DNA from: Vitrella brassicaformis CCMP3155
Taxonomy: Eukaryota > Protista > Chromerida
Assembly (NCBI GenBank): GCA_001179505.1
Contig: CDMY01000227.1
Location: 186,001 to 250,000 of the forward strand
Direction: 5' to 3'
DNA: 64,000 nucleotides
The notes below the pieces were generated by a model. It saw only the letters and a program-made list of their open reading frames with translations. It had not been told where the DNA came from and made no database searches. Below, in pieces: positions 26,561 through 63,911 of the stretch. The position numbers were made by a program, and so were the translations under genes. How positions within the stretch are numbered: position 1 is the stretch's first letter; every line of letters starts with the position of its first letter.

Positions 26561-29073
26561 TCAATAACGGGGTACGGTACTGTCGACCTGCCTGCTCCAC
26601 TCATCTACACCCCCCGCCAGGTTGACCACCTTCGTCAGCCTCCTCTTCTCACGCAGGTACTCGACCACCGCAGCGCTCCTCCGGCCGATGTGGCACACCA
26701 CCACCACACCCCTGCCGTCGTCCGGGATCTCCCCCGCCCTCATTTCGATCTCGTGAATGGGAATGTGGAGGGCAGTCACCCCCTCGGGCACTCTGATGGA
26801 GGCGATTGAGGTCTCGTAATCTTCCCGGACGTCTAGCAGGCAGCCGGGTGGTGTGGCTGAGGTGAGCCATTGGTGGGCCACCTTTGGGGAGATCTGCTTG
26901 ACGCCATGGGAGATGGTGGGGCCGCGACGCTTCGACGATGAGACGGAGGGAGCAAGGGGAGGGGGAGGGGGAGGGCCAGTCACCTGCAGAACGTGGGAGG
27001 GGTCATGTGTGCATCGCGTGGGCGTGTTTGTGCTGCGTGTGTCAATCGTTACCTCTTGTGTGTCGAAGTGGATAGAGATGCCGTCCTTGGCTTTGGTGTT
27101 GGGGATGCCCAGGTTGGTCACTGGCGGAGGGTGGCCCTCCATCAGCCGGAACCTCGGAAAACGCCTGCACACATACCATACATGCATACATGCGTCCGGC
27201 TCTTGATGCATTGCATTCATTGTGTGTGCTGTAGGCACACATCCGTTCGTACGCACCTGAGAATGAGGAATAGCGTGGCCTTGATGACCATCATCGAGAG
27301 AGGCCGGCCGATGCAGCTCCTCGCCCCAATGCCGAAAGGGACGAAGTGCTTTGACCTGTCAGAATCATCGCCACCCATCGACACCGGCAGAAATCTGCTT
27401 GCATGACAGCACACACAGCACCGAGACAGATTGGCCTTTTTGTGTTGACAGACTGACCATCCCTCCCTCCCTCCCCTTGTCAGCACACCTGCTGGGTCGA
27501 AATGCCTCTGGCTGGGTGAAGATGTCACTGTTTGCATGGTGCATACAGATGGGCACCCACAGGCCAACGCCGGCCGGCAGCACATAGCGAGAGGCCGACC
27601 GCCCACGCACCTCCACTGGGGCCGTAAGGAAGCGAGCACACGCCGCCCCCACATCCGCCAGCCGGAGGGACTCGCACACCACTGCGTGCAGAAAGGGAAG
27701 GGCGAGGAGGCGGTCGACGGCAGCACGGTCGAAGGGCGCGCCCACCCCTGAGAATGACGGCCTGGAAGGATAGAAAACGGACCGTTAGACTGTGCGTGTG
27801 TGGTTGCGTGTGCGTCCCCTCCTCTCACCCGCATCCTTTGGCGAGCTCCTGTACAAGCCTGTCTTTCTCAGACGGCGCGTTTGCCAGGTGGTACAACGAC
27901 CACCCAATCGCCGCGGCGACGTCGTCAAATCCAGCGAGGACGAGGATCAGGCACGTGTCGCGCACCTTCTCCACACTCCACCCCTTCCCACGCAGTATCC
28001 TCACCACAGTCACCGCCCCACTGTCACTCTCTGCTCTCTCAATCAGGTCCTCCAGGATGCGATACACACGCCCGACGGCCGTCCAGAAGGCCTGGTCGCG
28101 AGCAGCCCTGGGGCTGAAGAGCCGGCGAATGAGGGCGAGAGGGGAGGGTGCGGGGGACCCTTCGTAGGACTGCACCCTGGCTGCGATGGCGTCGTCGAAT
28201 GCGGTGCGGAATTCCTTGACGGTCTGGGGCGTGGCTGCAGGTCCGAAGCAGACCCGACAGATGAGCTCCATCGTCATGGACGGCAACACCGCCTGCATGA
28301 CACACACACACACACAAACGTGTGAATGAATGAACATAACACGTTTTTGGGTAGAGTCTGTGCCCTCATGTCTGTCTGTCTGTCTGTGTTGTCACCTGCA
28401 CATCAACGGGCTCCCCCTGTGGTTCCGTGACCCAGCTGACCACATGCCGCTCGACGCAATCAGCCATCACCTCAGCGCTCAGCAAGGCCTCGAGCGACCC
28501 ACTGATGGCGCCGGCATCTGCCGAGGGTGGTGGTCCTCCTCCTTTGCTGTGCGAGAGGATGGGGATGAGGACCCCCCTGTCCTTCTTGGCGTCTGCGGCA
28601 GCCAGACACATCAGTCCCGTGCGGCCCATCAGTGCGCTGCGGACTTCATCGAGCTGTGTCCTGTCACTCAGACGCATTACCTGCACCAATTGACACACAC
28701 AGACGTGACGCACCCGCTAGGCATGCATGGCTCGCCGTTCGCTCACCGTCTTGCTATTCTCCTCGGTCGGCGCCACACTCACGACACACCTGCCGTCGTG
28801 CCAATACGACGCAACAGGCCCATACGCCTCAGCCAGCCACGTCAGAAATGAGCCCAGACCGCCCTTGTCCGCGATGAGGGTGGAGTGATCTGGTCGAAAG
28901 AGTATCGACAGAGGGCTGCTGAAGATGGACAGGCCGGGGATCTGCCGCATGCGCCATACCAGCAGCAGCCGTCGGATGATGTCTTGGGAGAGCCACGCCG
29001 AGAGGCCGAGAAGGGCCAGTGCTTCAAGGAGGAAGACGTAGGGTGTGTGATGCTCCTTCACCGTCCTCAGCAT
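26561..29073 (-). CDS. Cytochrome P450 with N-terminal membrane anchor, fused to a C-terminal rhodanese domain
   Basis: Anchor YVFLLEALALLGLSAWLS. I-helix AGFDDV, K-helix ESLR, FRPSRF, and heme loop FGIGARSCIG (27307-27336). In-frame splicing (phase 2, then phase 0) leads to the rhodanese: LLDVRE...VVVCHIGRRSAAV...VVNLAGGVDEW...VPRY*. The start could instead be the upstream ATG at 29142. Confidence 0.88.
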
Positions 29074-56218: not shown

Positions 56219-57557
56219 TCAGGCGCCGTAGGCATTCTTGAGATGGTCAGACCACTGCTGCATGGTCCAGCCCGATGATATCGCGTTGTCCACGAGGCCG
56301 TTGACAATCACTGTCGGTGTCACGTGGATGCCTGCACAGTCACACAACACATGAAACAAACACGTACGTCACGAGGGCAATCGGGTGTCTGCGTGAAGTA
56401 GCGGGTCTAATCTGGCTTCACCGACCATTCTGTCTGCCGTACTTGGTGTGAAGCTTCTGCTCCTTGACCACCATATCATTCTCGGGAGTCCCAGACGTCA
56501 TATAGGTCTGCACACATCCACACGTGGACATAAAGCATGTAAGCCCTCGGACACACACACAGACAAGCAGCTCATCTCTGTCTCGGGCCCACCTTGAATT
56601 GCTCTGCGTTGAAGCCAACGTCGGCAGCGATTTTGACTATCTTGTCGGCCACCTGTGCCTTGGACTCGCCCTCGACAGCCTGGTCCACGAAGAGGTCACG
56701 CTGGGCGAACAGCTGCTGCACAAGGGCCACGTAGTTGGGCTTCCCTGGAGCCGAGTCAAGCTGCCGGCCAAAGAGAGAAGAGATAAAGTGGGGTGAGGGT
56801 GGGGGTATCTATCCATCAGTCTCTCTGTTCACTCACCATGTACGCGACGATGGCTGCCTGTCCGAGCGTGGATGCCTGCCAGTGCCACGGCTGCACATAG
56901 TGGTGGTACACAAACTGCACAGACGGGAACCCTGCACAACACACCCACCATGAGATGGATGACACACCATATGAGATGATTCAAGGAACGGAGAGATGTG
57001 GGAGCTTGTTTCCTCTCACTCACTTGGCGCGACCTCCTTGATGAGCGTGTTGCTGATTTTGGCACAGAAGGGGCAAATCATGTCCATGAACACCTAAGAG
57101 CAACACATACACACGACCAACAAGCAAGGTTGCATCGCCATGCATGCGTTGCCTTGGCCGCACCTCCACTTTGGCCACTTGGTTGGCGTCAGCGTTGTTG
57201 ACGGGGAACCCCGCAGCCATCCGCATGGTATGAGGGCGCCGCGAACGGGAAGAGGAGAGCTCACTCGAGTGCCGCCTCAGTCGGGCAGAAGGAGCGTTGA
57301 TAGCGCCGCCTGCAAACATGAATCAAGACACGCGCAGAGGATGGCGCTTTGTCGTGGAGACTGACCAGAAGGGATGAATCCTTCTGCCGCCTCGAGAGCG
57401 ACCTACATGTCATCACACACACAGACAGGAGAAGACTGCAGCAGACATATCAGCATCTGGTGCGATAGATGGATGAGCTGACCTGAAGATTTCGCGTTGC
57501 AGTGATGGTGCTCAGCGCTTGAGCCAACAGTAGCGAGAAAGCGAATGCCAACTGCAT
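56219..57557 (-). CDS. DsbA/thioredoxin-fold oxidoreductase with a bipartite presequence
   Basis: VFMDMICPFCAK (CPFC at 57064-57075), VQPWH, GIHVTPTVIVNG, SSGWTMQQW. Spliced N-terminus MQLAFAFSLLLAQALS...AAEG-FIPSG followed by an Arg/Ser-rich segment. Confidence 0.8.
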
Positions 57558-59251: not shown

Positions 59252-60339
59252 CGACATTCCGTGTGTGTGTCTTCGTGGCTGACGGAAGAAAACACGGTGG
59301 TATGATGGCATCAGATTCTACTGTTGTCGACGCGACGGAAGGGAAGCTCGATTCAAAAGTCGTCAGTCTCTGTCTCTCTATCTTCGTGTGTGCATAAACG
59401 TGTTCAGTAGGTGTGCAAGGATCTTGAAACTCATGCAGGCCCCCCACCCCCTCCCAACGCACGCACACAACCCAGCCGAAAGGATGGGGGGGTCAAGGGG
59501 GAAGGGGTGGCACCCTGTGCTTGGATCAAAGAAGGCAAATTCCATCTTATTCGCACCACCACCACCCACTCACTCCAGACCAACCCACCCGAACCCAGCC
59601 CCTGTGTGGTGTGTATGAACAGCGAGTGCCCGTCATCTCTGCGAGCACACCAGAGAGAGAAAGAGGCGTATGAAGGCCACAGAGGGATTGCACAGCACAG
59701 CACGGACCGATCGCAGAGAGCCCCGATTGCAAACGCTCACGCAGCCCTCAGACACACACACACACACACACACAGGTGGGCTGCTATATCATACTGTCCC
59801 TCGTCCACTCACACATTCTCAGGTGATTGTCACACACAGACGGACGGCCAGACAGGCAGACAGGCAGGCCCCTGCTCCCACCCAGTGACCTCTCCCAGAC
59901 ACGCAGCCAACATGTATGTATGCAGTTAGCATGGAGGCGCTTGACGCAAATGAATGGAGACACACATACCCACTCACACATTCACACCCACAGTCACACC
60001 CCCAGTGGACGGACTCGACCGGTTCATTTGTCAGTCCGCCCATCAAGCGGGTGTGTGTGGCCAGGGTGTGTGTGTGTGTGTCTGGTCTGTGGTTGGCTGA
60101 CTCGAGTTGAAAGGAAGAGAGGAACGAAGGCCCACTACCCCCCATCGCATGCACCCCTTCCACGCATCCATCATGCCCATGATAATATATGTGTGCCTGC
60201 TGTGTGATTCAGACACTATGAACGTTCGGACGTATGGACAGTGAACGAATGAAGCGTATGAACGACACGACACACACGACGCACGTACCCATGCACCGCA
60301 ACAGTCCAGCCATCCCATCTTTCGGTCATCACCACTCAG

Positions 60340-60671
60340 TCATCCGTCAAAACGCCACACCGTGAGCATGGCGCTGGTCCGCTGGAACACCCGGCTGCAC
60401 TCGCGGATCACAAAGGGCACCTCCCTCTCGGCCGGGACCACCTGACACACATGACACCACACGACATGCACAAGAGGCTCAAGTCAAGTCAGGTGCGGTG
60501 GTTGAGAGTTTCCCATCGATCGCTCACCTCAGTGAATCGGTTTGACGCCTTCCCGCCAGGCAGCCGTCCCTTGCGTGAGGAGGAGAGGATGTCACGGAGA
60601 CCCTCCAAACTCGTGTAGTCCTGCAAGGGCAGCAGGTGAGCCTCCCTCCCCCTCTCTCCCTTTCTCTCTCG

Positions 60672-60702
<31 letters not shown>

Positions 60703-63700
60703 CCTGGTCGCATGAGTGGTACCTCTCCATCTTTTTTGAATCCCCCTATCCACAGCTCCTTGGGGGTCACGCTCTCCAGCCACGTCCAGCTGAAAACACA
60801 CACAGAGAGAGATAGAGATACACACACACATCCATGTGTGTGTGTGCGTACGGTGAGGTGAAGACGAGCAGTCCGCCCGGCTCCAACAACTGATGCACGG
60901 TCGTCAGGAACTTGCTAGGGTCAGGCAGACGACACTAACGGACACAAGACAAGACAAGACAAGAAACACACACCACAAAAGTGAGAGAAGCAAACATCCG
61001 CCCACCCACTCGTCCCGTCCCTCCACGTGTGCAGCGGTCCATACCAGCAGATTGCCCCCGAATATCAGGTGGAATTTGCCCCCCATCGCCTCAGCACTCG
61101 GCAGCGCCATCGCGTCCAGCCGGCGGAAGCTCACCCGGTCCGCTATGCTCTTGTCGGTCAGCCCCAGCTGGTCGAACGTCACCTCCCTCCGCTCTGTGAG
61201 CCGCCCCTCCGTGGCCACACGCCACTCCACCCGCCCCTCACGAACCACCTGGCTGCCTGCGGCCGCAAAGGCCTGCGAGTAGTCCGATCCAACGACCTGG
61301 TGGACACACACACAGACAGGGAGGGAGAAGTGATCAATGATGGGGCGTGTGTGTGGGGTGTGGGGCGGAGTCACCTGGTGGAAGTGCTTGGAGAGCTCCA
61401 TGGTGGCACGTCCCACCCCGCCGCCCACCTCCAGGCATCGTGTGTCGGTGAGCGGGACGACCAACGGGCCGTGCTGTCGGAAGAGCTGGCCGCAGAGGGC
61501 GGCGCAGCGGGCGGGGTAGTTGCTCACGCCGTTGAACACATCCTGATCGATCAACACATAGATCAACAAGGAGAATAATGCCTGCGGGATGATGTGTGTG
61601 TTGTTGCCTGCCCTTCCCGCGCAGCTGAGCTTACCGTGCTGAAGTGCATGTCTAGGTAGACGTTGACCATCTGCGGCGTCTCGTACATGCCCTCAGGGCC
61701 GCCCTGCTTCTCCTTCTCTGTCTCCAGCAGTGGCTCAGGGAGCACCACGCCCCCACCCGCCAGCTGGTCATCGTCTTGCTTGCGCCGCCAGTAGGTCAGC
61801 CGCACCCAGCCGACCTCCGTCTTGCGGGCGGTGTCCCGCACACAATACGGCAGCTCAGTGGCCGGCAGCTCCGCAACGGCGTCGAAGTGAGGCGAGAGGA
61901 GGGCCGTCAGCCCCTCCTCGATGCTCACCTGACGGCCGCTGGCCGAGAGATAGCCGCCAATGCACTCCTCTGTTTTGTGGGTGGGCGGTTTGCCCGTGTA
62001 GCCGATGACGAGGAGGCCACCGGGGTTGATGTGCTTGTGGATGGCCTGGAGGGCGGTTTTGGGTTTGCTGAGGGACTCGATGAAGCCAGGGGAGGCCATC
62101 ACAACCAGATCTGGTGGATGGATGGAGTCACAGGCAGACAGACATACGTGGTGTATGCGGGTGGCGGCTGTTGTGGTGTGTGGGTGTCTGTGGGTGGGTG
62201 TACCGTATTCGTTGAATTTGTTGATGTCCAGGTTGGCGACGTCGGCCTGGTGGAACTGAATCTTCCTGTGACACACACACACACACGCACAGAGAGAGAA
62301 AGAGAGAGAGAGCGATGGATATGGATGGATGGATGGATGGCCTCCTCCATCTCACACTCACTTGTGAGGATCGTCGATGGCCTGGTGGAAGGCGAAGTCC
62401 TTGGCGACGATCTCGGGCGGGTACTCGACTAGGTCGCCCTCCGTCTGTATGGCATAGCGGATGCGGCCGTTGGTCATGAACCGATCCGCCACTTGGAAGT
62501 ATCTGCACAGACAGCATACCACCCCCACCACACGCACATAGATGGGGCAGGGCACAATACAGATGGCCATTTGTGTGTGTGTGTGTACCGTGCGGTGAGG
62601 TCTGCCCCGTGGACGGTGTCGAAGAACTTGTGTGCCAGCTCGAACGTGGTGCGACCCGCGCCACAGCCAAACTCTGAGTTTCGATCCATCCATCCATCCA
62701 TCCATATGTGTGTGGCGTGACTGTTGGGGTTGACTGACCGAGGGCCTTGGACATGTGCAGCGGGATGCCGACCGCCTTGACCGCCGACACACACTCCCTG
62801 TGGGCAGGCACACACATCACATGAGGCAGATGATGGTGTTCTGCCTGAGTGACTGACTGCCTGACTGACGTACTCTGCGAGGAGCGTCGGAAAACTGTCT
62901 GCCTTGGTCCAGGGGTGGGGCTGGTAGTGGAAGGCGATGGTGTCGGCCGTCAGCTTGTCGGTCTCAAACGGACACACTGTCGTCTTGACGACGGCTGCCG
63001 ACTCCACATATCTGCATACTCGAACGCACCGCACCGTGAGTTTGTGTTGTGCGTTGCGTGTGTGATGGCCGGCGGTGTTTGCTTTCACTCACCTGATGCC
63101 AGCGTGTTGGTAGAAGTGTCGTCTGAATGCGTATCTCGAGTCGGTCGTGGCCTCGTTGCCGGTGGAGATCCAGGAGCCGCCCTTGATGAGGTTGTGCTTG
63201 CCGTCGATCGTAGGTGTCGTGAAATCCTGCTCATCGAGAGCGAAAAGCGTGTGTATTGGGTGGCTGCCTGCCTGGCTGCATGTGTGTGGGGCTGCTCACG
63301 TCGTAGAGGGGGTGCACGGCGAATCCGTCAAAGACGTCCACGGGCGTCTCGGTGTGCTGCCATACATTGCCAACCACATCGTATAGACCTGACACACCCA
63401 CACACACACGCACAGATGATGGAGATAATGCAGGTGAGTTCCTGCAGTGCAGCTCTCCCCCACCCCACCCCACGCACCGCTGTCAGTCTGCTTGAAGGTG
63501 CTGACGGGGCACGACGACGCCCAGTGCTCGAGGTTGACATTGCCGGGCGCCCTCTTCCAGTCGGGCTGGTCCTCACCGAGAGGCACCACCAGCCGCCGCA
63601 TCAAATGCCACTCCTCCTCGCTCGGCAGCCGAATCGGTGCGCCACTCATCTTGTGTGCTTTCCAGTTGCAGAAGGCCTTGGCCTCGAGGTTGTTGACCTC

Positions 63701-63911
63701 CACTGGCCAGTCCCACGGCATCTCGATCTCGCTCGTCAGACAACGCAGCCGCCAAGCAACACTGCATGAACAGAAGAGGAGTGATGTCTAGTTGGATGGC
63801 GGAAGGGTTTGTGGGGTGTGGGTAGTCTCACTTGGTGTGTGTGTCAGTTGGGGGTATCCAGAAGAGGGGCTTGGTCACCTGCATGTCCTGCACCCACTGC
63901 CAACCTTCCGC
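60340..63911 (-). CDS. ovoA: 5-histidylcysteine sulfoxide synthase OvoA (ovothiol biosynthesis), 3' part: FGE-sulfatase-like domain plus two tandem SAM methyltransferase domains. The 5' end lies beyond the window.
   Basis: EGWQWV...FW, MPWDWPVEVNNLEAKAFCNWK, RLPSEEEW, GLYDVVGNVWQ, HNLIKGGSWISTGNEA, RYAFRRHFYQHAGIRY. MTase-1 runs FETD...EFGCGAG...TYWRRK. MTase-2 runs YETP...LEVGGGVG...NLLCRLPDP...SPWTWLE...VPFVIRE...LTVWRFDG*. Confidence 0.92.

What the first reader, a model, noticed from the sequence alone, without database searches (positions are those of the whole stretch)
60340..62970. OvoA ovothiol synthase with two tandem, divergent methyltransferase domains
Seen: after the FGE-like domain, MTase-1 starts at FETD (about 62960), has motif I EFGCGAG (about 62654-62673), and ends at TYWRRK (61779-61793), which is where canonical OvoA stops. 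A linker of about 30 aa then leads to a second complete OvoA-type MTase (YETP at about 61680, LEVGGGVG at 61411-61434, NLLCRLPDP, SPWTWLE, VPFVIRE, LTVWR). MTase-2 keeps the usual SP.TWLE and NL..RL substrate-side motifs. MTase-1 has replaced them (GYTGKP, SPGFIESL) but keeps a glycine SAM-binding loop. The two copies share no intron positions and are highly diverged, so this is not a recent duplication or an assembly artefact. Established: canonical OvoA is DinB + FGE + one MTase that methylates the imidazole to give ovothiol A; ovothiols B and C carry additional alpha-amino methyls. To my knowledge the enzyme adding these is not established. Inference: one domain may be the missing N-alpha methyltransferase, giving a single-polypeptide route to ovothiol B/C or a new thiohistidine. 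Alternatively MTase-1 is a degenerate structural spacer.
Basis: partly seen in the sequence, partly recalled or inferred. Interest (0 to 1): 0.85.

Follow-up and report, generated by a model that had tools for sequence, protein, structure and literature searches.

The report
Ovothiol synthase with two methyltransferase domains
The alga Vitrella brassicaformis makes its ovothiol (antioxidant thiol) synthase as one protein carrying two copies of the methyltransferase domain instead of one, a design shared with dinoflagellates and not mentioned in any paper I could search, and what the extra, altered copy does is still unknown.

Summary
The minus strand at 60340-63911 holds 16 GT-AG exons. They are 100% identical to residues 303-1072 of the public Vitrella brassicaformis protein CEL95347.1 (1072 aa, named only "uncharacterized").

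The protein has a DinB/FGE sulfoxide synthase followed by two full OvoA-type SAM methyltransferase domains (MT1, MT2), which are 25% identical to each other (E 2e-19). Spliced contigs from three runs, and two intron-free transcript contigs encoding the exact 1072-aa protein, show a single mRNA.

The design is not unique. At least 57 fetched proteins share it, from Chromera, dinoflagellates (Togula, spliced-leader-bearing transcripts) and one Piscirickettsiaceae MAG. MT1s and MT2s each form one clade, so the design arose once and is old.

- **MT2** keeps the residues of characterised N-pi methyltransferases.
- **MT1** superposes on the canonical methyltransferase position of crystal structure 8KHQ (Z 51.6). 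It keeps an invariant SAM-binding loop but has lost the family's invariant residues outside the SAM-binding motifs.

It is weakened because known producers of ovothiol B or C are described with a single-methyltransferase OvoA. The "dead spacer" idea is weakened by the conserved SAM loop.

Ten literature searches found no description of this design. I class it as a new variant of a known kind.

The parts
63832..63911 (-). Exon encoding residues 303-329 of the FGE-type part of the sulfoxide synthase. The gene's 5' part (DinB domain and first half of FGE) lies beyond the window end.
   Evidence: Read from the sequence. It matches P0259 residues 303-329. The acceptor AG and donor GT were read by eye and were not checked by script.
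63478..63761 (-). Exon within the FGE-sulfatase domain (MPWDWPVEV...TFKQTDS).
   Evidence: GT-AG boundaries. Spliced contigs place the junction at 63386/63476 (+2). Pfam FGE-sulfatase hit.
63300..63388 (-). Exon within the FGE domain (GLYDVVGNVWQH...HPLYD).
   Evidence: junction 63225/63299.
63093..63226 (-). Exon at the end of the FGE domain (DFTTPT...FYQHAGI).
   Evidence: junction 63011/63093.
62874..63011 (-). Exon holding the RYVES linker and the N-terminal helices of MT1 (FETD...LLAE).
   Evidence: The donor was corrected to 62874 from spliced contigs. Identical to P0259.
62739..62797 (-). MT1 micro-exon (ECVSAVKAVGIPLHMSKAL).
62589..62673 (-). MT1 exon with SAM-binding motif I (EFGCGAGR) and the acidic residue after strand 2 (GAD).
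   Evidence: C, G and G are invariant in 28 of 28 MT1 domains.
62362..62502 (-). MT1 exon (YFQVADRF...DDPH).
   Evidence: junction 62502/62589.
62204..62265 (-). MT1 exon (KIQFHQADVANL...NEY).
   Evidence: junction 62110/62204.
61635..62110 (-). One 476-nt exon holding the C-terminal half of MT1 (DLVVMASPGF...TYWRRK), the linker of about 28 aa, and the start of MT2 (MYETPQMV...). The fusion therefore lies inside a single exon.
   Evidence: Continuous ORF. Spliced contigs cover it whole. The best database matches span the junction.
61375..61542 (-). MT2 exon with motif I (LEVGGGVGR).
   Evidence: junctions 61541/61634 and 61294/61373.
61045..61296 (-). MT2 exon (VVGSDYS...FGGNLL).
60852..60934 (-). 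MT2 exon (CRLPDP...FTSP), completing the family's NL..RL motif.
   Evidence: junction 60789/60852.
60723..60789 (-). MT2 exon (WTWLESVTPKELWIGGFKKDGE), holding the family's SPYTWLEE..W.GG motif.
60528..60620 (-). MT2 exon, including a lineage-specific insert (SSSRKGRLPGGKASNRFTE) that is modelled with low confidence.
   Evidence: pLDDT dips at residues 1023-1027.
60340..60441 (-). Last coding exon (VVPAEREVPFVIRE...TVWRFDG), with the stop codon at 60342-60340.
60000..60339 (-). 3' untranslated region. The spliced contigs run on past 60000.
   Evidence: The same contigs cover 60000-60438 without a break (table 8).

Best explanation
This is the 3' three-quarters of the single OvoA gene of Vitrella brassicaformis (CEL95347.1, 1072 aa). 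One mRNA encodes a DinB/FGE non-haem-iron sulfoxide synthase followed by two OvoA-type class I SAM methyltransferase domains.

**Origin (shown).** The design arose once. It predates the split of the chromerid and dinoflagellate sequences sampled here, and it is compatible with a tandem duplication of the methyltransferase domain.

**Position of the two copies (shown).** The inner copy, MT1 (residues about 509-770), still sits where the canonical methyltransferase sits against the synthase. The outer copy, MT2 (about 798-1072), is an added module.

**Function (inferred).**
- MT2 keeps the family's invariant residues, so it most likely performs the known N-pi methylation of 5-thiohistidine that yields ovothiol A.
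- MT1 most likely still binds SAM and keeps the scaffold role of the canonical domain.
- MT1's family-invariant residues outside the SAM-binding motifs have been rebuilt. If it is a catalyst, it probably methylates a different atom or a different substrate than MT2 does.
- Which atom or substrate that would be cannot be told from sequence.
For: **Gene and transcript**
- The GT-AG exon model is 100% identical to P0259 residues 330-1072.
- Spliced contigs in runs X1, X2 and X6 give the predicted junctions. One 4722-nt contig spans the 3'UTR, MT2, MT1 and FGE. The DNA run X3 keeps the introns.
- Two intron-free JGI transcript contigs translate to the exact 1072-aa protein.

**Identity**
- TIGR04344 ovoA_Nterm scores 605.8 bits against a cut-off of 400.
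- TIGR04345 ovoA_Cterm scores 199.6 bits for MT2 and 162.0 bits for MT1.
- Both domains match 8KHQ, OvoM (9BXL) and OvsM (9BXH) by sequence.

**Conservation of the design**
- Only 47 proteins among 1.84 billion representatives match the junction exon, and the best ones span the junction.
- At least 57 fetched proteins have two methyltransferase domains. They include Chromera P0019 and Togula jolla P0184.
- MT1s form one clade (support 100) and MT2s form one clade (support 98).
- Holding MT1 and MT2 together as one clade is not rejected and scores 8.9 lnL units better.
- The synthase domains of the two-methyltransferase proteins also group together (support 97).

**MT2 canonical, MT1 altered**
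- Of 62 columns that are at least 95% conserved in canonical and stand-alone enzymes, MT2s keep 70% and MT1s keep 46%.
- MT1 keeps ExGCGxGR (C, G and G invariant), the Asp after strand 2, and Arg755.
- MT1 lacks the equivalents of Y811, N956, R960, S985, P986, T994, W999 and Q1059.

**Position in the structure**
- The AlphaFold model of the whole protein has pLDDT 87.6 and pTM 0.83.
- Residues 21-772 superpose on 694 of 698 residues of OvoA_Th2 chain 8khq_B with Z 51.6 and rmsd 4.0 A.
- MT2 (797-1071) matches stand-alone OvoM/OvsM with Z about 32 and rmsd 1.8 A.
Against: - No biochemical or metabolite data exist for any member of this family.
'Acceptor side' therefore means family-invariant residues outside the SAM motifs, not proven contacts.
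- MT1 evolves fast (end branches up to 2.9 changes per column). It has also lost a hairpin in dinoflagellates. Both could mean relaxed selection on catalysis.
- A vestigial OvoA-like methyltransferase domain is documented in AshA (PMC13674229).
- In Oxyrrhis marina homologues MT2 lacks its N-terminal half, including motif I, while MT1 is intact. MT1 may therefore carry the ordinary N-pi activity in at least that lineage.
- The trees contain no canonical eukaryotic OvoAs (diatom, animal, kinetoplastid), so the timing of the duplication is bounded only within the sampled sequences.
Confidence: 0.55

Rival explanations
1. One of the two domains (most plausibly MT1) methylates the alpha-amino group. 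The single polypeptide would then make ovothiol B or C.
For: - The N-alpha methyltransferase is still unknown (PMC12631010).
- MT1 keeps an intact SAM site but has altered family-invariant residues elsewhere.
- After strand 4, MT1s carry a clade-specific A-[S/Q]-P-G with an inserted Pro in place of NLIDRL. From memory, this is the position where amino-group methyltransferases carry (D/N/S)PP(Y/F); this is a weak lead only.
- A bacterial MAG keeps both domains in a compact two-gene operon with a PLP enzyme.
Against: - Nothing identifies the acceptor atom.
- Strongylocentrotus purpuratus makes ovothiol C, and the sea-urchin OvoAs are described with a single methyltransferase domain (PMC4768315).
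- Phaeodactylum makes more ovothiol B when its ovoA alone is overexpressed (PMC9890322).
- No ovothiol B or C has been reported from chromerids or dinoflagellates in the papers I searched.
- E. tasmaniensis OvoA accepts N-alpha-methyl-histidine, so methylation could precede sulfur insertion (PMC8433421).
Confidence: 0.15
2. MT1 is a catalytically dead pseudo-enzyme. It is kept because the canonical methyltransferase position is needed for folding, dimerisation or packing against the sulfoxide synthase. MT2 does all the methylation.
For: - MT1 occupies the canonical position (Z 51.6 to 8khq_B).
- In OvoA_Th2 that domain forms the dimer core and touches the partner's N-terminal domain (PMC10696552).
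- MT1 falls below the curated family cut-off (162 against 170 bits).
- MT1 has lost many family-invariant residues and shows long branches.
- AshA provides a precedent for a vestigial OvoA-like domain.
- From my own knowledge, tandem methyltransferase proteins with one inactive copy are well known, for example PRMT7, RsmC/RlmG and the nematode PMTs. These proteins appear among the weaker fold matches.
Against: - Motif I (C, G, G) is invariant, and the Asp after strand 2 is at least 90% conserved, across 28 MT1s that are otherwise only about 33-38% identical. A pure spacer would be expected to lose these.
- MT1 has its own conserved signature.
- In Oxyrrhis it is MT2, not MT1, that is truncated.
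Confidence: 0.25
3. The two-domain protein is an artefact: a gene-model fusion, an assembly duplication, or MT2 being a separate gene.
For: None was found. The only hint is that the Chromera public model P0019 contains just MT1+MT2, which shows that gene models at this locus can be split.
Against: - MT1's C-terminal half, the linker and the start of MT2 lie in one exon.
- Spliced contigs from three runs in two studies, and two JGI transcript contigs, carry the whole ORF.
- The two copies are only 25% identical.
- The same design recurs in dozens of independent transcriptomes.
Confidence: 0.01

Closest known systems
Canonical bifunctional OvoA (Erwinia tasmaniensis OvoA; Hydrogenimonas thermophila OvoA_Th2, PDB 8KHQ)
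   Same: - DinB plus FGE sulfoxide synthase with the HX3HXE iron motif.
- The methyltransferase follows directly after the ...FRYVES linker.
- Residues 21-772 of the model superpose on 694 of 698 residues of 8khq_B (Z 51.6, 43% identity).
- TIGR04344 scores 605.8 bits.
   Different: - A second complete methyltransferase domain (about 275 aa) is appended after a linker of about 28 aa.
- The domain in the canonical position (MT1) is the diverged one. It falls just below the family cut-off (162 against 170 bits).
Stand-alone N-pi methyltransferases OvoM (9BXL-N) and OvsM (9BXH-K)
   Same: - MT2 matches them with Z about 32, rmsd 1.8 A and 35-40% identity.
- MT2 keeps the NL..RL, SPxTWLE, W.GG and RE..R..Q motifs.
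   Different: - Here the module is fused C-terminally to a full OvoA that already has a methyltransferase.
- MT1 shares the fold and the SAM motifs but not those other family-invariant motifs.
Other OvoA architecture variants: the Hydra OvoB-OvoA fusion, methyltransferase-less OvoA, and AshA with a vestigial methyltransferase
   Same: They show that the OvoA domain architecture varies, and that an OvoA-type methyltransferase domain can lose its function (PMC8433421; the 2026 Chlamydomonas preprint; PMC13674229).
   Different: None of these sources mentions a duplicated methyltransferase domain. I could not check whether Hydra's gene, said to be closest to Vitrella's, has two.
Tandem-methyltransferase enzymes (plant and nematode phosphoethanolamine N-methyltransferases, PRMT7, RsmC/RlmG)
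   Same: They have two class I methyltransferase folds in one chain. From my own knowledge, the two either divide successive methylations between them or one is an inactive scaffold. They appear among the weaker fold matches.
   Different: They are unrelated in sequence (10-14% identity) and in domain arrangement (rmsd 17-23 A). This is an analogy, not kinship.

Membership tests
OvoA (5-histidylcysteine sulfoxide synthase) | N-terminal DinB plus FGE module reaching the curated equivalog score (TIGR04344, cut-off 400 bits) | tested here: met
   It scores 605.8 bits over residues 28-500 of P0259. Pfam finds DinB_2 and FGE-sulfatase. Only the part from residue 303 onward lies inside the window.
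OvoA (5-histidylcysteine sulfoxide synthase) | HX3HXE iron-binding motif | tested here: met
   H189, H193 and E195 are invariant in the 46-sequence alignment A3. These residues are encoded outside the window.
OvoA (5-histidylcysteine sulfoxide synthase) | Overall fold and domain packing of a solved OvoA | tested here: met
   Match to 8khq_B: Z 51.6, rmsd 4.0 A, 694 of 698 residues aligned to model residues 21-772. This compares a predicted model with a crystal structure.
OvoA (5-histidylcysteine sulfoxide synthase) | Sulfoxide synthase activity on histidine plus cysteine | not testable with these tools
   This needs an enzyme assay.
OvoA-type N-pi methyltransferase (TIGR04345, OvoM, OvsM): MT2 | Curated score cut-off (170 bits) and the family-invariant motifs | tested here: met
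   MT2 alone scores 199.6 bits. It keeps 48 of 62 columns that are at least 95% conserved. It matches OvoM/OvsM with Z about 32.
OvoA-type N-pi methyltransferase (TIGR04345, OvoM, OvsM): MT1 | Curated score cut-off (170 bits) | tested here: not met
   MT1 alone scores 162.0 bits, with a full-length alignment (model positions 1-242). It is the least diverged of all MT1s; with my own canonical profile the others score 28-106 bits.
OvoA-type N-pi methyltransferase (TIGR04345, OvoM, OvsM): MT1 | SAM-binding motif I and the acidic residue after strand 2 | tested here: met
   EFGCGAGR and GAD are present. C, G and G are invariant in 28 of 28 MT1s, and the Asp is at least 90% conserved.
OvoA-type N-pi methyltransferase (TIGR04345, OvoM, OvsM): MT1 | Family-invariant residues outside the SAM motifs (N and R of NLIDRL; S, P and W of SPYTW; the T...W.GG hairpin; the Q of RK.Q) | tested here: not met
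   In Vitrella MT1 these are replaced by S666, S672, a gap, G699, H704, C709 and E758. They are kept in at most 12% of MT1s, apart from the Trp of SPYTW, which 88% of MT1s retain. Whether these residues contact the substrate was not verified.
N-alpha methyltransferase of ovothiol B/C (no family is defined yet) | Methyl transfer to the alpha-amino group of 5-thiohistidine or ovothiol A | not testable with these tools
   No reference enzyme exists; the literature lists it as 'unknown MT' (PMC12631010).

The most novel reading that the evidence does not exclude
MT1 is an active methyltransferase with a new regiochemistry on the thiohistidine scaffold, either the alpha-amine (ovothiol B/C) or the sulfur. 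Chromerid and dinoflagellate OvoA would then be a three-activity enzyme, and the first known enzyme to make a methylated 5-thiohistidine other than ovothiol A.
Probability: 0.3. Interest if true: 0.8.

Novelty: new variant of a known kind. Interest (0 to 1): 0.55.

Why it matters
Ovothiols are major redox thiols of marine life. The enzymes known to act on 5-thiohistidine are OvoA's methyltransferase, a recently found acetyltransferase, and the stand-alone OvoM crystallised with 5-thiohistidine. The methyltransferase that makes ovothiol B and C is still missing.

A conserved second OvoA-type methyltransferase domain with an intact SAM site and an altered remainder of the active site is a concrete, easily testable candidate for new thiohistidine chemistry in ecologically dominant algae, namely dinoflagellates and chromerids.

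If MT1 instead proves inactive, it would be a clean natural example of duplication in which the copy in the ancestral position becomes a scaffold while the appended copy keeps the chemistry.

The bacterial two-gene operon version offers a simple route to test this in a heterologous host.

Tried and rejected
- **Pfam on single exons.** The pieces were too short to score. This was solved later by finding the full public protein.
- **Word-based homologue searches with the MT1 and MT2 regions of P0001.** They did not return the window's own protein. A third search with the FGE region did.
  - None returned a paper that describes two methyltransferase domains in OvoA.
  - Two searches were lost to unrelated words that start with the same letters.
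  - Gerdol et al. 2019, which used the Vitrella sequence, is not held, so I cannot exclude that it notes the extra domain.
  - The paper on the OvoM/OvsM structures was not found, so ligand contacts could not be mapped.
- **Protein atlas look-alikes of MT1.** These gave only the expected N1-methyltransferase clusters.
- **Artefact, separate-gene and recent-duplication readings.** These were considered and rejected.
- **An independent fusion of a stand-alone OvoM-like gene as the origin of MT2.**
  - This is not excluded by the free tree.
  - A tree holding MT1 and MT2 together as one clade fits slightly better.
Full report
**What is in the window**

The minus strand between 63911 and 60340 carries a run of short exons separated by introns of 62-102 nt that are rich in CA and GA repeats. 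I built the exon chain by hand.

- The 15 scripted exons have AG acceptors, and all but the stop-codon exon have GT donors. The phases fit and the product has a single stop. The boundaries of the 16th exon (63911-63832) were read by eye.
- Contigs from public runs corrected one junction: the intron is 62873-62798.
- The 743-aa product is 100% identical to residues 330-1072 of P0259. One further upstream exon (63911-63832) supplies residues 303-329.
- P0259 is CEL95347.1 / UniProt A0A0G4EH92 of Vitrella brassicaformis CCMP3155. It is 1072 aa and is named only 'unnamed protein product' or 'uncharacterized protein'.
- So the window is Vitrella, as other agents of this scan had noted. The gene's 5' third (DinB domain and first half of FGE) lies beyond the window end. 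The public gene model already joins both methyltransferase domains.

- Pfam finds DinB_2, FGE-sulfatase and two separate methyltransferase regions.
- NCBIfam gives ovoA_Nterm 605.8 bits (cut-off 400). For the OvoA C-terminal methyltransferase model (cut-off 170) it gives 199.6 bits for MT2 alone and 162.0 bits for MT1 alone, both aligned over the whole model.
- MT1 (about 509-770) and MT2 (about 798-1072) align end to end at 25% identity, E 2e-19.
- Their 5 and 6 introns share no alignment column.

**One transcript**

- The C-terminal half of MT1, the linker of about 28 aa and the first 19 residues of MT2 lie in a single 476-nt exon (62110-61635).
- Contigs of three runs (X1, X2, X6) skip exactly the predicted introns, with GT..AG ends. 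One 4722-nt contig runs from the 3'UTR through MT2 and MT1 into the FGE exons. A DNA run (X3) keeps the introns.
- These runs are not on record as RNA, so I rely on the intron-free joints rather than on the label.
- Independently, two JGI contigs of 4.85 kb hold an uninterrupted ORF that translates to the exact 1072-aa protein. The same sequence is also listed from the MMETSP transcriptome.

**The design is a family, not a singleton**

- A full scan of 1.84 billion representative proteins with the junction exon found only 47 matches. The best ones (1107, 791, 630, 463 and 567 aa) align across the MT1-linker-MT2 junction.
- Three further searches collected dozens of proteins of 1030-1150 aa with FGE plus two methyltransferase regions. 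With a profile of canonical OvoA methyltransferases, at least 57 fetched proteins show two such domains.
- Named members are Chromera velia Cvel_20971 and the dinoflagellate Togula jolla. The Chromera model holds only MT1+MT2 and is probably split.
- Two transcript contigs begin with ...TCAAG or TCAAGGCTCAAG. From memory, this is the 3' end of the dinoflagellate spliced leader.

**Phylogeny**

- In a maximum-likelihood tree of 73 methyltransferase domains, all MT1s form one clade (SH-aLRT 100). All MT2s form one clade (98), and it sits among canonical and stand-alone bacterial enzymes.
- Within both clades the Vitrella and Chromera copies fall outside the main dinoflagellate group.
- A tree that forces MT1 and MT2 into one clade is not rejected and scores 8.9 lnL units better than the quick free search (p-AU 0.68).
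- The sulfoxide synthase domains of the two-methyltransferase proteins also fall on one side of a branch (97).
- My reading is that the design arose once, compatibly with a tandem duplication, before the sampled chromerids and dinoflagellates diverged.
- The limit of this analysis is that no canonical eukaryotic OvoA was in the trees.

**Which copy is which**

- Among 62 columns that are at least 95% conserved in 112 canonical or stand-alone enzymes, MT2s keep 70% on average and MT1s 46%. Vitrella keeps 48 of 62 in MT2 and 39 of 62 in MT1, the highest of any MT1.
- MT1 keeps what a SAM site needs. ExGCGxGR has C, G and G invariant in 28 of 28 sequences. The Asp after strand 2 is at least 90% conserved. 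Arg755 is invariant.
- MT1 has lost the family-invariant residues elsewhere.
  - The Tyr of the N-terminal helix is lost.
  - The N and R of NLIDRL are lost. They are replaced by a clade-specific A-[S/Q]-P-G with an inserted Pro.
  - The S-P of SPYTW is lost.
  - The Thr and Trp of the T..W.GG hairpin are lost, and dinoflagellates delete that hairpin outright.
  - The Gln of RK.Q is lost.
- I could not confirm that these are substrate contacts, because the OvoM/OvsM structure paper was not available.

**Structure**

- AlphaFold with family alignments gave confident models: MT1-MT2 with pLDDT 88.1 and pTM 0.87, and the full length with pLDDT 87.6 and pTM 0.83.
- Residues 21-772 of the full-length model (synthase plus MT1) superpose as one body on 694 of 698 residues of the OvoA_Th2 crystal chain 8khq_B (Z 51.6, rmsd 4.0 A, 43% identity).
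- MT2 (797-1071) is the part that best matches stand-alone OvoM and OvsM (Z about 32, rmsd 1.8 A, 35-40% identity).
- So the diverged copy sits in the ancestral position. In OvoA_Th2 that position forms the dimer core and touches the partner's synthase domain (PMC10696552). The conserved copy is the appendage.

**What it most likely does**

- Shown: one mRNA, two complete domains, a single old origin, SAM motifs under constraint in both domains, and MT1 in the canonical structural position.
- Inferred: MT2 carries out the known N-pi methylation of 5-thiohistidine. MT1 still binds SAM, keeps the scaffold role and, if catalytic, has a different acceptor.
Nothing here points to the alpha-amine, however.
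- Sea-urchin OvoAs are described with one methyltransferase domain although S. purpuratus makes ovothiol C (PMC4768315). Phaeodactylum makes more ovothiol B when its ovoA alone is overexpressed (PMC9890322).
- The pseudo-enzyme reading has a precedent in AshA's vestigial OvoA-like domain (PMC13674229). It has to explain an invariant SAM loop.
- It also has to explain Oxyrrhis marina, where MT2 has lost its N-terminal half, including motif I, while MT1 is intact.

**Novelty**

- The protein is public but unnamed. JGI's automatic names for its relatives mention only the ordinary two functions.
- None of ten full-text searches found a paper describing a duplicated methyltransferase domain in OvoA.
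- A 2026 preprint that lists OvoA architecture variants names only the OvoB fusion and methyltransferase-less forms.
- Gerdol et al. 2019, which used the Vitrella sequence, could not be read.
- I class this as a new variant of a known kind: well supported as an architecture, open as to function.

**A side result**

- One two-methyltransferase OvoA (P0081, 1045 aa, no introns) lies on a compact bacterial-type contig. It sits between a bacterial-type cysS gene and, overlapping its stop codon, a class V aminotransferase-fold PLP enzyme. GC content is uniform across the contig.
- The same sequence is in a GTDB representative MAG labelled uncultured Piscirickettsiaceae.
- In the trees it is nested among dinoflagellate sequences. 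This suggests transfer from a eukaryote to a bacterium.
- It also offers a convenient system for testing what the two domains make.

Noticed in passing
L004 10001-14475 (the same sequence is in L006, MAG contig CAYFOR010000017.1): A two-methyltransferase OvoA (P0081, 1045 aa, intron-free) sits in a compact bacterial-type contig labelled uncultured Piscirickettsiaceae. Its stop codon overlaps the start of a class V aminotransferase-fold PLP gene, which is probably the C-S lyase. In the trees it is nested among dinoflagellate sequences, so eukaryote-to-bacterium transfer is the likely reading.
   Followed up: partly
P0215 and P0216 (Oxyrrhis marina, 941-950 aa): These homologues keep MT1 with an intact EVGCGPGR loop. 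Their MT2 lacks its N-terminal half, including motif I. In this lineage the diverged copy is the one that looks able to bind SAM.
   Followed up: partly
window 56219-57557, minus strand (L001 18234-19572): The next gene downstream on the same strand encodes a 261-aa Thioredoxin_4/DsbA-like protein, a thiol-disulfide fold next to a thiol-biosynthesis gene. No link between them was tested.
   Followed up: no
P0019 (Chromera velia Cvel_20971, A0A0G4GA84, 567 aa): The public Chromera model contains only MT1+MT2 and is named 'methyltransferase domain-containing protein'. The sulfoxide synthase part is probably split off into a neighbouring model. Its MT1 is extremely diverged (end branch 2.87).
   Followed up: no
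L011 1-5, L012 1-3, L014 1-12: Transcript contigs of two-methyltransferase OvoAs begin with TCAAG or TCAAGGCTCAAG. From memory, this matches the 3' end (and a relict copy) of the dinoflagellate spliced leader, which supports a dinoflagellate origin.
   Followed up: partly
window 61950-62000 (P0259 residues about 700-720): Vitrella's MT1 is the least diverged MT1 of the family. It keeps the hairpin segment (ECIGGYLSASGR) that dinoflagellate MT1s have deleted, and it scores 154 bits against a canonical profile where the others score 28-106.
   Followed up: yes
window 26561-29073: Another first-stage note on this window reports a cytochrome P450 fused to a rhodanese domain. I did not examine it.
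   Followed up: no
L005 (ENA contig ctg579592_3x_l, 61 kb): Another two-methyltransferase OvoA (P0183, 1094 aa) is an uninterrupted 3.3-kb ORF. It lies in a contig otherwise full of short ORFs without domains, plus a reverse-transcriptase fragment. This looks like eukaryotic (dinoflagellate-type) genomic DNA carrying an intron-free copy.
   Followed up: no
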